Below are positions 52,490 to 55,990 of a stretch of DNA of 64,000 bases, piece by piece. The DNA comes from Magallana gigas (lineage: Eukaryota). The position numbers and the translations under genes are program-made. The notes beneath the pieces are model-generated. The model saw nothing but the letters and a program-made list of their open reading frames with translations, ran no database searches and had not been told where the DNA came from. Location of the stretch: the NCBI RefSeq assembly GCF_963853765.1, contig NC_088860.1, positions 13,702,001-13,766,000 on the forward strand. The letters run 5' to 3'. Position 1 is the stretch's first letter; the number at the start of each line of letters is the position of its first letter.

Positions 52490-55400
52490 CTACTCCCGCC
52501 TTCTCCGAACAATTCTGGACACAAATTGTCGAAATCTTTTCAACAAACCTGGTCTCTTTTCTTTCTTCTCTTCTCTCATTTTCTAGAATGTCATTTTTTT
52601 CTTTTATTAGAAGTAGAATTTTATTTGTGTAATTACTGAATTATTTTTTCAAAACTCGAATTGTCTTAAAATTTAATCTGATTGGACTTTGCTTGATGAT
52701 CTTATACCTTAACATACAATGGTTTAGACCGCTTTGTGTAACAGCAAGGCAGACACAGCATGACTCCTGTGAACGACTCCACGCTTTCTTCTTGGATTAT
52801 TCCCTTTTCGATCACATCTTGTATCTGTGAAATAATGATTTAACTATACATATTAACATGATAAAACAAACCTACATGTACATTATGTAAATTATTTCAT
52901 TTGACACTGAAAGTCACATTTGTCTGCAATACATTACGTATACCTACATGTGCATTTTCTTCTCTTATGGAGAGTTCGTTATTCCTCAGTTCCTCATGCT
53001 GCAAAAAAATAATCATTTTAAAGTAAATGGATGAATACAAGTTATGACCCTGTATTTACAATTTTTTACTTTCTCAGCTGAACTTATATAGCAATACTTA
53101 CCACGATCTCGTAAGCGGAGTCTTCGCTGTCCAGTTGGTGATAGCTGGCACCTGGGTATCCCGACCTCACTAAGCTAAAACGTAAAACCTATATTATATA
53201 TGTAAAATATGATGAGAGAGAGAGAGAGATGTTTGGAATTTTTATATTCAGTATGCATGTAACATATTGGATGGTTGAAGTTAATGGGCGGTGTTACTCA
53301 ACGTGACCTACATGTTGACATCGTGCTGTCGTATGGACTGGAAGAACTCCTCCACGGTCATTTTGTCTGGTTCACTCTGTGTCTCACTCATAGACATCAG
53401 GAGGGTGGAGCTGTGGAGAAGGGGGGGGGGGGGGTTTACAAATCATAGCCAACCTGGACTTATGCTTGTTTCAAACATCGCAAAGCGAGGAAAGTTACAT
53501 TTACAATTTTTTTAGGTATTGCGATTATTTTATTTACCTGGAACCTGCCCCCGGAAAGCCGACCCTCGGTAATCTATAATTAAACACAGGTAATATGAAA
53601 AGATTTATGTAGGATATGTATTGTATAATAATATTATACTAGTACAATAGCAAAGTTACATGAATTATGCTGTTTTCCGTCATATATTAAGTGACCATTC
53701 TAAATTTATCATTTTAATTTTTGTTTTAATTTGTCTATTATGACTTTATACCCTCCATAAACTGACGTCTCCATTTCTCTCTGTCTGATTTTCTGGTACA
53801 GTTCCTCAGGAGAGATAGGCGGGATATAATTATTTTCCAACAATTGTTTGCTTGATCTGAAGAATAGAAAAAAAACATTTGAATTAAAATTATCAATTCA
53901 TAAATTACTCTAACCAATAGCCTATAAGATACCAATGTATACATTTTTATTCTAAGTGAACGGAAAAAGAAGAAATCTTACAAATGAATATTATTTAATT
54001 ATAAAATACTATAGTTTACACTTAATCTGATTTTTAGATTGGGGGGGGGGGGGGTGTAGCATAAAAAATACAGCCGACTTTATCAGACCTGTTTGTCAGT
54101 GACTGCTGAGCTATACTCTATTTTTGTTTTTTTACATCTTTGATATTAAGAAGGCTGAATGGTTGTGACCTTTTACTAGACTATAAAAATCTTCTTCGAA
54201 GAAGAGCTCAGTAAAAAAGATACAGCAAAAAGTTAAAAAATTTCAAGGTAAAATATTTGATATATTTTTTCTACATTGGTTTATATAGCTACTCAAATCA
54301 TACCTAAAAATTTCAAGAAAATCGGATGGCAAATTTGTTGACCACTCAGTTAAGAGTATCCAAAAGCAAGTTTTTCCTAGCCCATATTTATCAGTCTTTT
54401 ATGGTTAAGAATAGAATAGAAAAGCGATATACATTTTTTTTAATGGTTAGATTTTGAAGCAAAAGACGAAAATTGTTTTAAAGTAAACAAAAATATAAAG
54501 ATGAACTTCAAAGGTAAAAATTGTATATCTGCATTGTTGAAGGATAGATATGAATCTTGCGCGAGCTTACGTTAGAATATCTTTTTGTCCGAGTTTCTGC
54601 AACTTTTCTTCCACTTGAAGAACCGACTGGCTTTGTGTTTTGTCGTCTCCAGAAAGGTTTAATTCAGAGCTGTAAAAACCAAGGTTCATTTCCAGATTAA
54701 AATGTTAATAATGAATTTAATCACGAGAACAAAAGATTTCACAAAATTCTCAACACACTCACCTGAGAGCGGCAGCTGAATTTTGTTTATTTTCCTCGTC
54801 CAATATCATTATATCTTCCTTTTCTTTTTTCTCCTTTCCTTCACCATTTTGTTCGAATTTGTCTACTGCCATCTCAGCCTGTCCGTTAGTTTCCGGAAAC
54901 CCTGATCTCAAAAGTCTGTTATGGAATAACCAAACGGGTTGCAAAATTGGCAAAATACACGGTAAGTGACTTCTACGGCAAACACTATTTAAATAAAAAA
55001 ATATTGGAGACTTTCAATGGCTTACATCTCCATTTCTCTCTGTCTCATATTCTGGAATATCTGTTCTACAGGGACAGCGGACTCCTCCTCTACTCCAAAG
55101 TCTTCTGACAGTCGTCTATAGGCAGTGATTTCAAACATTTTGATCATTAAGTTAGAGTTGTTTAATAAATGTAAATTTTTACACAAGTCACTTTTATACG
55201 AAATACATTAGAGTTTTACCCGGACTTTGCGGAATCATCACTTTGACCAATGTCCACAGACACCACCTGGTGTGGATCATCAATATACACCTCCTGTTGA
55301 ACAGAGTGAAATTGTTAATTACTTTACCCTTGTCAATTGCAACGTAAATTTAACTTTCAAATTGCCTTTTTTATGTTTTTAACCGAGTATTCAAAAGGAA

Positions 55401-55649
55401 AAATCCGGTTTTTGAAATTGTGAAAATGGTGGGTGGCTGCCAAAAGTGTACTCCTATTGTACGGATAACTTCTCCTACATTTTTCAAGGTAGGAAGTTGT
55501 TCTTTTGCAGGTCAATTGTACATCCATGTATATCAGAGATGTGCATATTACTTGTATTTGATTTTTGTTAATTTATGGGGGAAAATACAACCTGTTGTAT
55601 TTAGTTATTATTTCATTTGTTTCCTTTTAAAAGTGTTTCTTACCTCCAT
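52490..55649 (-). CDS. Uncharacterised acidic protein with a triplicated motif and polybasic C-terminus; 331 aa, 12 exons
   Basis: Minus-strand exons 55649-55644, 55293-55220, 55115-55026, 54915-54763, 54669-54571, 53856-53752, 53573-53538, 53410-53312, 53174-53102, 52998-52948, 52824-52708, 52582-52490 (996 nt). All introns are GT-AG, phases are consistent and there are no internal stops. Starts MEEVYIDDPHQVV, ends KRPGLLKRFRQFVSRIVRRRRE*. Confidence 0.8.
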
Positions 55650-55700
55650 ATCTTCAATGGTAAAACAGCGCTTGAAAACGTGTTCGAGTATCAACTCGAA

Positions 55701-55708
55701 TGACGTCA
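55701..55708. promoter_or_regulatory. Full CRE/ATF palindrome TGACGTCA, 52 nt upstream of the orphan gene ATG
   Basis: Motif seen directly; function is inferred only from position. Confidence 0.3.
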
Positions 55709-55910
55709 CAATTGAAAATCATTACGCGGATTACAATCATAACGTCACACAACACCCTTGTAGACTTCCTGGTTACTACGCCACAAAATATAGCGATATA
55801 AATTTTTTTTTGATATATTTTGTATATGAAATACATAGTCACTTTTTATTTAATCGATTAAATCGTTCCTATGAAAGAACAAAATAATATGCAATTAAAG
55901 AATGCGTTTC

Positions 55911-55913
<3 letters not shown>

Positions 55914-55990
<77 letters not shown>
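55914..55990. repeat. (GA)n microsatellite
   Basis: Direct reading. Confidence 0.95.

What the first reader, a model, noticed from the sequence alone, without database searches (positions are those of the whole stretch)
52490..55649. Orphan 12-exon gene with an exon-duplicated motif, a Cys cluster and an amphipathic polybasic tail
This gene is missing from the ORF track because its exons are tiny, yet 12 exons splice cleanly into 331 aa. Three copies of one motif occur: PVEQIFQNMRQREMEI-LLRSGFPE, SPEELYQKIRQREMETSVYGG-LPRVGFPG and TVEEFFQSIRQHDVNI-LVRSGYPG. Each is interrupted by a phase-2 intron at the equivalent point, which is evidence of exon-pair duplication. Seven consecutive phase-2 introns would allow in-frame exon skipping. 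The C-terminus has MLCLPCC (palmitoylation-like) and LLKRFRQFVSRIVRRRRE (basic amphipathic helix, membrane- or calmodulin-binding-like). Inference: a membrane-tethered multivalent scaffold of an undescribed family.
Basis: partly seen in the sequence, partly recalled or inferred. Interest (0 to 1): 0.7.

Follow-up and report, generated by a model that had tools for sequence, protein, structure and literature searches.

The report
Oyster-only repeat protein gene, annotated, uncharacterized
This is a real, transcribed 12-exon gene of the Pacific oyster, already in RefSeq as an uncharacterized protein, and it encodes a disordered acidic protein from a small oyster-only family that gained copies of a ~25-residue motif by exon duplication and ends in a conserved cysteine cluster and basic helix that probably hold it on a membrane.

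Summary
On the minus strand, 12 GT-AG exons join into 331 aa. Contigs from RNA runs of three studies show the junctions of introns 2-11 to the base; one low-depth contig shows intron 1. The protein is letter-for-letter RefSeq "uncharacterized protein LOC105340796 isoform X1" of Magallana (Crassostrea) gigas. So the gene is annotated but unstudied, and it is not a strict orphan. A 44-46% identical paralogue (LOC105340794, four repeats) lies 89 kb away. Two Saccostrea proteins carry at least six or seven repeats and the same C-terminal end. I found nothing outside oysters, and Pfam, NCBIfam and PDB gave no credible match. Every repeat in all three mapped genes is split by a phase-2 intron in the same codon, which confirms growth by duplication of symmetric exons. 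RefSeq isoforms X2 and X3 lack exactly exon 7 or exon 8, in frame. AlphaFold2 (pLDDT 38) and the ESM Atlas model (0.43) indicate disorder. Constraint is strongest on the repeats and the tail (omega 0.06-0.19, against 0.47 in the linkers). The membrane-tethered multivalent scaffold reading fits all of this, but neither lipidation nor any binding partner was tested. Interest is moderate to low.

The parts
55644..55688 (-). Exon 1: 5'UTR (reaching at least about 55688) plus ATG GAG (CDS 55649-55644), then donor GT
   Evidence: model. In one search, one X4 contig joins 55293 to 55644 and runs on upstream, with a 16-nt indel in the UTR. This is the only RNA support for intron 1.
55220..55293 (-). 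Exon 2 (74 nt), acidic N-terminal region
   Evidence: Joint 55115|55220 is seen in X2 and X4.
55026..55115 (-). Exon 3 (90 nt, phase 2-2): linker plus half-1 of repeat 1 (repeat 1 = 55075-55026 plus 54915-54888)
   Evidence: Joint 54915|55026 is seen in 3 runs. dS against the paralogue is only 0.36.
54763..54915 (-). Exon 4 (153 nt, phase 2-2): half-2 of repeat 1 (LLRSGFPE) plus a K/E-rich linker
   Evidence: Joint 54669|54763 is seen in X1 and X2. This exon was the query that recovered the database proteins.
54571..54669 (-). Exon 5 (99 nt, phase 2-2): decayed fourth half-repeat (54623-54571), aligned with the paralogue's intact second repeat
   Evidence: Joint 53856|54571 is seen in 3 runs. 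The paralogue's following 129-nt exon is absent here, and intron 5 holds no relic of it.
53752..53856 (-). Exon 6 (105 nt, phase 2-2): half-1 of repeat 2. The last 15 nt (53766-53752) are an extension beyond an older donor-like site (GAGAC|GTCAGT)
   Evidence: Orthologue P0009 lacks the 5 extra residues. Joint 53573|53752 is seen in 3 runs.
53538..53573 (-). Exon 7 (36 nt, phase 2-2): half-2 of repeat 2 (LPRVGFPG). It is skipped in RefSeq isoform X2
   Evidence: Joint 53410|53538 is seen in 3 runs. P0006 and P0005 lack exactly these 12 residues.
53312..53410 (-). Exon 8 (99 nt, phase 2-2): linker plus half-1 of repeat 3. It is skipped in isoform X3 and looks homogenised with the paralogue
   Evidence: DNA is 89% identical to the paralogue over 254 nt, including flanking intron (53463-53214). 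dS is 0.23, against saturation elsewhere.
53102..53174 (-). Exon 9 (73 nt): half-2 of repeat 3 (LVRSGYPG) plus an acidic Y..L / Y..V stretch (53146-53102)
   Evidence: Joint 53174|53312 is seen in X2 and X4. Against the paralogue, omega is 0.06 at dS 1.6.
52948..52998 (-). Exon 10 (51 nt, phase 0-0), a helix-prone acidic segment that the paralogue lacks
   Evidence: Joints 52998|53102 and 52824|52948 are seen.
52708..52824 (-). Exon 11 (117 nt): conserved SFTG...C..CC.Y.KR box (52776-52717; Cys286, 289, 290)
   Evidence: It aligns across Magallana and Saccostrea.
52490..52582 (-). Exon 12 coding part: K/E/R linker, then EKRPGLLKRFRQFVSRIVRRRRE (tail helix 52549-52493) and stop 52492-52490. The 3'UTR continues to at least about 52300
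   Evidence: Joint 52582|52708 is seen in 3 runs, plus a second haplotype of the same junction. This segment has the highest hydrophobic moment in the protein, 0.65. Omega is 0.14. An AATAAA lies at 52286-52281.
55688..55793 (-). Proximal promoter blocks shared with the paralogue: an ETS-like CAGGAAGT and a palindromic CRE, TGACGTCA
   Evidence: 75% identity over 106 nt; alignment. Function was not tested.

Best explanation
SHOWN: window 52490-55649 (minus strand) is the Pacific oyster gene LOC105340796. It is a transcribed 12-exon gene whose 331-aa product is annotated only as 'uncharacterized protein'. It belongs to a small family seen so far only in oysters: this gene, an inverted paralogue 89 kb away, and Saccostrea proteins of about 570 aa. 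Family members have a variable number (3 to at least 7) of a roughly 25-residue motif, consensus about VEELFQQMR.KE.EILLRAGFP, separated by fast-evolving charged linkers. They end in a conserved module: SFTG, a cluster of three Cys, basic residues, then EKRPGLLKRFR.F.SR..RR. The repeat number grew by tandem duplication of symmetric phase-2 exons, because each repeat is cut in the same codon. This gene has lost one repeat. Two half-repeat exons were homogenised with the paralogue. INFERRED mechanism: the protein is an intrinsically disordered, strongly acidic cytoplasmic protein. S-acylation of the Cys cluster, together with the adjacent polybasic amphipathic helix, holds its C-terminus on the cytosolic face of a membrane. 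Each repeat (a short helix followed by an extended L..R.GFP piece) is a docking site for the same, still unknown, partner, so the protein gathers several copies of that partner at the membrane. Skipping of exon 7 or exon 8 lowers the number of complete sites from three to two.
For: Gene and transcript: model; RNA-contig joints at introns 2-11 in 2-3 runs each and intron 1 in one; identity to RefSeq isoform X1, P0007. Family: paralogue and Saccostrea P0015 and P0016. Only these two genes in the 564-Mb genome carry the motif. Exon duplication: the identical phase-2 intron position in all 7+4+3(+1) repeats. No known family. Disorder: AF2 pLDDT 37.7 and pTM 0.18, with helices only at motif half-1 and the tail; Atlas models at pLDDT 0.43 and 0.39. 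Cytoplasmic and peripheral: no signal peptide or TM segment in any member; net charge -32 for residues 1-290 and +14 for 291-331. Functional constraint sits where the model needs it: omega is 0.19 for the pooled motifs (R3 0.06), 0.14 for the tail and 0.47 for the linkers. The Cys box and tail align residue by residue across genera, although overall identity is only about 30%. Valency isoforms: X2 lacks exactly E7 and X3 lacks exactly E8.
Against: No experiment or predictor for S-acylation was available, and three Cys next to basic residues are only suggestive. The basic C-terminus also fits a loose bipartite nuclear-localisation pattern. No partner is known, and the motif matches no catalogued motif or domain. 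The dN/dS counts per region are small (1-9 changes each). The X2 and X3 isoforms come from RefSeq models and were not seen among the joints listed for the four runs I laid (contigs drop rare forms). The Cys-box segment itself is not strongly constrained (omega 0.46), although the Cys residues are kept. Raw poly(A) reads from one run showed no coverage in a 1% sample, so expression may be low or tissue-restricted.
Confidence: 0.45

Rival explanations
1. It is a nuclear or nucleolar acidic disordered protein. The basic C-terminus would be a nuclear-localisation signal rather than a membrane anchor, and the acidic repeats would bind basic nuclear proteins or act as a chaperone-like sink.
For: KR, about 10 residues, then a K/R-rich stretch and a final RRRR fit a loose bipartite or monopartite NLS pattern (read from the sequence). 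The body is very acidic. The automatic names of relatives ('DNA ligase 1-like', 'nexilin-like') reflect K/E-rich similarity to such proteins.
Against: The conserved three-Cys box immediately upstream has no role in an NLS, yet its Cys residues are kept in all members. The tail conserves hydrophobic positions (LL..F..F/V) and has the highest amphipathic moment in the protein, which a plain NLS does not need. No DNA- or RNA-binding or ligase domain was found.
Confidence: 0.2
2. It is a cytoskeleton regulator. The repeats would be a diverged actin-monomer-binding motif (WH2-like: an amphipathic helix, then a basic L..R element), as in tandem-WH2 nucleators, or a GoLoco-like G-alpha-binding helix.
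For: This rests only on my own reading: hydrophobic pair-x-x-[IM]-R-Q, then L-x-R, recalls the WH2 pattern LL..IR.G..LKKV. Tandem arrangement with disordered linkers is typical of WH2, GoLoco and RPEL proteins. AF2 places a helix on half-1 and an extended piece on half-2, at low confidence.
Against: The full-length proteins give no hit to Pfam WH2 or GoLoco, even at E <= 10. The spacing between the helix and the L.R element is 2 residues longer than in WH2. There is no [DE]QR triad as in GoLoco. No PDB peptide matches the repeat profile.
Confidence: 0.1
3. It is a secreted shell-matrix-type protein. Such proteins in molluscs are also acidic, repetitive, disordered and lineage-restricted.
For: The composition and lineage restriction resemble many molluscan shell-matrix proteins (general knowledge; the literature context came up).
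Against: No member has a signal peptide or any hydrophobic N-terminus. The conserved Cys and polybasic C-terminus are cytoplasmic-type features. The accession names appear in no indexed paper.
Confidence: 0.03
4. It is a young, fast-evolving gene that is transcribed and spliced but has no specific molecular function, with repeat conservation maintained mainly by gene conversion.
For: Taxonomic range is restricted. Overall omega is high, 0.37-0.45. There is evidence of conversion at E3 and E8. Allelic protein divergence is high (P0005 against P0006).
Against: Omega is well below 1 in the motifs, the tail and E9 (E9: 0.06 at dS 1.6, where conversion cannot explain it). The architecture and C-terminal module are retained between two oyster genera at only about 30% overall identity.
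Confidence: 0.07

Closest known systems
RefSeq LOC105340796 (Magallana gigas uncharacterized protein, isoforms X1-X3) and UniProt K1QRC0_MAGGI
   Same: It is the same gene. Isoform X1 (P0007) is identical to the window's 331-aa product. X2 and X3 are its exon-7 and exon-8 skipped forms.
   Different: Nothing differs in sequence. The database entries carry no function, family or motif annotation. K1QRC0 is an older model that lacks E7 and E10 and uses another acceptor in the last exon, which RNA contigs here do not support.
LOC105340794 (M. gigas paralogue) and the Saccostrea cucullata / S. echinata proteins auto-named 'nexilin-like' and 'DNA ligase 1-like'
   Same: They share the repeat motif, the phase-2 intron position inside each repeat, and the Cys box and basic tail.
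   Different: Repeat number differs: 4 in the paralogue and at least 6-7 in Saccostrea, against 3 plus one decayed copy here. Saccostrea has one exon per repeat unit, whereas Magallana has an exon pair. The automatic names are not backed by any nexilin or ligase domain.
Lipid-anchored disordered membrane proteins of the GAP-43 / paralemmin / MARCKS type (analogy only, from general knowledge)
   Same: Cys residues flanked by hydrophobic and basic residues next to a basic amphipathic, calmodulin-binding-like helix; otherwise acidic, disordered chains with no TM segment.
   Different: There is no sequence relationship (no Pfam hit). The module is C-terminal here. Acylation is untested. Those proteins lack this repeat.
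Tandem short-motif scaffolds: WH2 (Spire, Cobl), GoLoco (LGN/AGS3), RPEL (MRTF, Phactr)
   Same: Several copies of a 20-30-residue helix-forming motif, separated by disordered linkers, each able to bind one copy of a partner. Copy number varies between relatives.
   Different: The motif sequence fits none of these. Pfam models are silent and the defining residues are absent. The partner is unknown.

Membership tests
RefSeq gene LOC105340796 of Magallana gigas | Protein sequence identity to the annotated product | tested here: met
   P0007 (isoform X1, 331 aa) equals the window's spliced product letter for letter.
The oyster repeat family itself (this gene, LOC105340794, Saccostrea P0015 and P0016) | At least 3 copies of the roughly 25-residue motif, each split by a phase-2 intron in the codon before L..R.GFP | tested here: met
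   mapped all three genes onto genomic DNA. Searches give the repeat alignment A3 (invariant E5 and R12; Q9, E15, L19, G23 and F24 at 90% or more).
The oyster repeat family itself | C-terminal SFTG / three-Cys box followed by EKRPGLLKRFR.F.SR..RR | tested here: met
   Alignment of the C-termini of five members from two genera.
WH2 (Pfam PF02205) | Match to the family model; amphipathic helix followed at fixed short spacing by LKKV/LRKV | tested here: not met
   WH2 is absent from the Pfam hits of P0002, P0007, P0010 and P0015 at E <= 10. The spacing is 2 residues longer and the element reads L.R.G (from the sequence).
GoLoco (Pfam PF02188) | Match to the family model; [DE]-Q-R triad after the helix | tested here: not met
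   No hit. No repeat has a [DE]QR triad.
FANC_SAP (Pfam PF18081) | A domain-level match above the gathering score | tested here: not met
   P0015 reaches 30.6 bits for the whole protein only by summing weak repeat matches; 0 stretches pass on their own. The M. gigas proteins give no hit.
Nexilin / DNA ligase 1 (the automatic names of the Saccostrea relatives) | Presence of the families' domains (nexilin Ig domain; ligase adenylation and OB domains) | tested here: not met
   None appears among the Pfam or NCBIfam hits, and PDB phmmer finds nothing.
Molluscan shell-matrix (secreted) proteins | N-terminal signal peptide | tested here: not met
   The N-termini are acidic. The highest 10-residue hydropathy in the first 30 residues is 0.46 or less for the full-length M. 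gigas proteins. No signal-peptide predictor was available.
S-acylated peripheral membrane proteins (functional class) | Thioester-linked fatty acid on the Cys cluster; Cys-dependent membrane association | not testable with these tools
   Context only: three conserved Cys flanked by hydrophobic and basic residues, with no TM segment.

The most novel reading that the evidence does not exclude
The roughly 25-residue repeat (a helix plus an extended L..R.GFP cap) is a previously undescribed partner-docking motif. The family would then be an oyster-specific, S-acylated membrane scaffold whose valency is set in two ways. In evolution, it is set by gain and loss of symmetric phase-2 exons (3 to at least 7 sites). 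Within one animal, it is set by skipping exon 7 or exon 8, which removes one half of a site.
Probability: 0.3. Interest if true: 0.5.

Novelty: new variant of a known kind. Interest (0 to 1): 0.33.

Why it matters
The gene gives a clean, fully documented example of how a disordered protein gains and loses binding-site copies through duplication, loss, donor-site shift, conversion and skipping of symmetric phase-2 exons. All of these states are visible in two paralogues and a second genus. It also defines a motif and a C-terminal module that no database describes, which can now be searched for in other molluscs. If the membrane-scaffold reading is right, the family is a lineage-specific addition to oyster cell signalling or membrane organisation. 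The partner is unknown and the family is narrow, so the wider impact is modest until a function is found.

Tried and rejected
(1) Pfam on nine single exons gave nothing at E <= 10. (2) Pfam and NCBIfam on the stored full-length proteins gave only sub-threshold or summed-repeat matches (VanY, DUF4874, FANC_SAP, DhaM, PPR), which I reject as noise. (3) PDB sequence searches with the repeat profile and with P0015 gave only an 8-residue resemblance to the ankyrin consensus VEVLLKAG at E > 1. (4) Two ESM Atlas look-ups gave no feature hits and TM scores of 0.31 or less. (5) A relic of the lost repeat exon in intron 5 was not found. (6) I considered an X-box/RFX (ciliary) promoter motif and dropped it, because only an ETS-like site and CREs are shared with the paralogue. 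(7) The very deep RNA coverage at 55375-55636 is a dispersed repeat, not an exon or an RNA gene of this locus. (8) A joint 53412->55026 in one run would be an out-of-frame E3-to-E8 skip with a non-canonical end. Its shorter side is 26 letters, below the k-mer length of the contigs, so I treat it as doubtful. (9) By eye I considered FFAT, PP1 RVxF, IQ, MIM, NES, AKAP and B56 LxxIxE patterns; none fits all repeats. (10) No complex prediction was run, because there is no candidate partner and no eukaryotic reference chain on hand. (11) Papers: the accession names occur in no indexed paper. (12) The joined 331-aa model was never sent to a search tool. Searches went exon by exon by reference, and then used database proteins that those searches returned.
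Full report
WHAT IS THERE. Every intron is GT-AG, and introns 2-8 are seven consecutive phase-2 introns. The protein has net charge -32 over residues 1-290 and +14 over 291-331. It has no hydrophobic stretch long enough for a signal peptide or TM segment. Its highest helical hydrophobic moment, 0.65, is in the last 18 residues.

IS IT TRANSCRIBED AND SPLICED AS CLAIMED? Yes. RNA runs hold 15-24% of the sampled words of the 3.5-kb stretch, about what exons plus UTRs would give. I laid contigs from RNA runs of three studies on the region. They show joints exactly at 55115|55220, 54915|55026, 54669|54763, 53856|54571, 53573|53752, 53410|53538, 53174|53312, 52998|53102, 52824|52948 and 52582|52708, each in two or three runs and all with CT..AC ends, which is GT..AG on the minus strand. 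One low-depth contig joins exon 2 to the ATG exon and continues into the 5'UTR with a 16-nt indel. Two variant joints at the last intron carry the letters of a second haplotype (NKG instead of KMR), which also appears in older database entries. Raw poly(A) reads of a fourth study gave no coverage in a 1% sample, so expression there is low. Very deep coverage at 55375-55636, inside intron 1, comes from a dispersed ~240-nt repeat with about 1,900 first-look candidates in the genome.

IDENTITY. Pfam found nothing in nine exons. Exons 4, 6 and 11 hit only themselves in the 564-Mb genome. The 'orphan' claim rests on absence of relatives, so I sent exon 4 to the exhaustive search. It returned a 288-aa UniProt entry, K1QRC0 of Magallana gigas, and two fragments. 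From that stored protein, the word search returned RefSeq 'uncharacterized protein LOC105340796' isoforms X1, X2 and X3. Isoform X1 (P0007) is identical to the window's 331-aa product. So the window is Pacific oyster, and the gene is annotated but uncharacterized. An earlier scan note had already called this genome oyster. No indexed paper names the gene or its paralogue.

FAMILY. The same searches found LOC105340794 (P0010, 361 aa, 44-46% identical). Transcript-derived orthologues of both genes came from another oyster (P0009, P0011). With the family alignment as query, Saccostrea cucullata P0015 appeared (566 aa, 5'-partial). With P0015 as query, S. echinata P0016 appeared (570 aa). Nothing outside oysters turned up. 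The searches are word-seeded and a short motif is hard to detect, so this is a lower bound on the range. The paralogue lies on the same chromosome at C8:13,662,262-13,665,428 (+). Its 3' end is 89 kb from, and convergent with, this gene's 3' end. A profile of the repeat finds only the seven half-repeats of these two genes in the whole genome.

THE REPEAT. The three copies here score far above shuffled controls. The paralogue has four copies. Its second copy aligns with exon 5 of this gene, where only a decayed half-repeat is left, and the paralogue's next exon (129 nt) is missing here with no relic in the 714-nt intron 5. Saccostrea has seven (P0015) and at least six (P0016) well-kept copies. 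Twenty repeats align without gaps over 27 positions. The consensus is about VEELFQQMRQ.EIEIL.RAGFP.T, with E5 and R12 invariant and Q9, E15, L19, G23 and F24 kept in 90% or more.

EXON DUPLICATION. I mapped the three proteins onto their genomic DNA. Every repeat (7 in Saccostrea, 4 in the paralogue, 3 plus the decayed one here) is cut by a phase-2 intron in the codon just before L..R.GFP. In Saccostrea one symmetric exon runs from half-2 of one repeat to half-1 of the next. In Magallana a second phase-2 intron divides the linker, and the paralogue repeats even that position (QNSA..|S), so the duplicated unit there was an exon pair. In repeat 2 of this gene the site matching the other donors still reads GAGAC|GTCAGT, but splicing uses a donor 15 nt further on and adds five residues. 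The orthologue P0009 lacks them. RefSeq isoform X2 lacks exactly exon 7 (half-2 of repeat 2) and X3 lacks exactly exon 8 (half-1 of repeat 3), both in frame. I could not count these forms in reads, because the one read-laying run showed only the best-supported joints.

EVOLUTIONARY CONSTRAINT. Against the orthologue (dS 0.22), omega is 0.37 overall. It is 0.19 in the three motifs pooled (0.16 in R1, 0.06 in R3), 0.14 in the tail and 0.47 in the linkers. Counts per region are small. Between the paralogues, synonymous sites are saturated except in exon 3 (dS 0.36) and exon 8 (dS 0.23). Around exon 8, 89% DNA identity runs 50-100 nt into both introns. That points to gene conversion of the two half-1 exons. 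Exon 9 shows real constraint (omega 0.06 at dS 1.6). The C-terminal module is the best-kept part between genera: SFTG, three Cys within five to six residues, basic residues, then EKRPGLLKRFR.F.SR..RR.

STRUCTURE AND KNOWN FAMILIES. AlphaFold2 with the family alignment gives mean pLDDT 37.7 and pTM 0.18, with helices only on half-1 of each motif, in 88-149, in 238-284 and on the tail. The ESM Atlas's own models score 0.43 and 0.39. Pfam, NCBIfam and PDB give no credible match. The scores for the Saccostrea proteins are sums of weak repeat matches with no stretch passing alone. The automatic names 'nexilin-like' and 'DNA ligase 1-like' have no domain support.

HOW IT MOST LIKELY WORKS. What is shown: a cytoplasmic-type, disordered, acidic chain; repeated short motifs under the strongest constraint; and a conserved Cys-plus-basic-helix end. 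What I infer: the Cys cluster is S-acylated, and together with the polybasic amphipathic helix it fixes the C-terminus on the cytosolic face of a membrane. Each repeat then docks one copy of an unknown partner, and exon skipping changes the number of complete sites. I give this about 0.45. Rivals are a nuclear acidic protein with a C-terminal NLS (0.2), a WH2- or GoLoco-like cytoskeletal or G-protein regulator (0.1, and the membership tests failed), a secreted shell-matrix protein (0.03, no signal peptide), and a spliced but functionless young gene (0.07, contradicted by the constraint pattern).

VERDICT. The gene is not a strict orphan and is already annotated, but its family, motif and C-terminal module are undescribed. 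Novelty: a new variant of a known kind, namely lipid-anchored disordered multi-motif scaffolds. Interest is moderate to low until a partner or a localisation is shown.

Noticed in passing
window 55375-55636 (intron 1 of the gene): A dispersed ~240-nt repeat, about 80-82% identical to at least 40 scored copies (about 1,900 first-look candidates) on all chromosomes, often followed by tandem ~170-180-nt sub-repeats. It explains the very high RNA depth there. Raw reads fit only about 55484-55523 and then run on unlike sequence.
   Followed up: partly
window 53214-53463, compared with L013:2952-3203: 89% DNA identity between the two paralogues across exon 8 and 50-100 nt of both flanking introns, while the rest of the genes is saturated at synonymous sites. 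Exon 3 is similar (dS 0.36). This is probably gene conversion, or conserved intronic splicing signals around a skippable exon.
   Followed up: partly
window 55688-55793 and L013:599-702: The promoter-proximal blocks shared by the paralogues contain an ETS-like CAGGAAGT, a TGACGTTA and a palindromic CRE, TGACGTCA, about 55 nt upstream of the ATG.
   Followed up: no
window 55899-55985 and 53218-53232: A long (GA)n microsatellite lies just upstream of the promoter, and a short one lies in intron 8. The paralogue's locus has a (GA)n tract too (L013 about 3183-3258).
   Followed up: no
window 53421-53433 and 54041-54055: Poly-G/C runs of 13-15 nt lie right at the acceptor of intron 7 and inside intron 5. 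The first sits next to the skippable exon 8.
   Followed up: no
window 53102-53146 (residues 231-245): An acidic stretch with Y..L, six residues, then Y..V, preceded by SEDS. By eye it resembles ITAM-like or LC3-interacting (LIR) patterns. It is highly constrained (omega 0.06-0.10), but the paralogue P0010 lacks the second Tyr.
   Followed up: no
L014 and L015 (Logan transcript contigs): The database proteins P0009 and P0011 start with a GTG read as Met. This is an artefact of bacterial-style gene calling on eukaryotic transcripts. The open frames continue upstream.
   Followed up: yes
P0016 (Saccostrea echinata): The repeats alternate between two linker types (…DTKDKIKSA.DDTK… and …DTKQQTRSK…), a higher-order two-unit repeat that suggests recent tandem amplification of exon pairs.
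   Followed up: no
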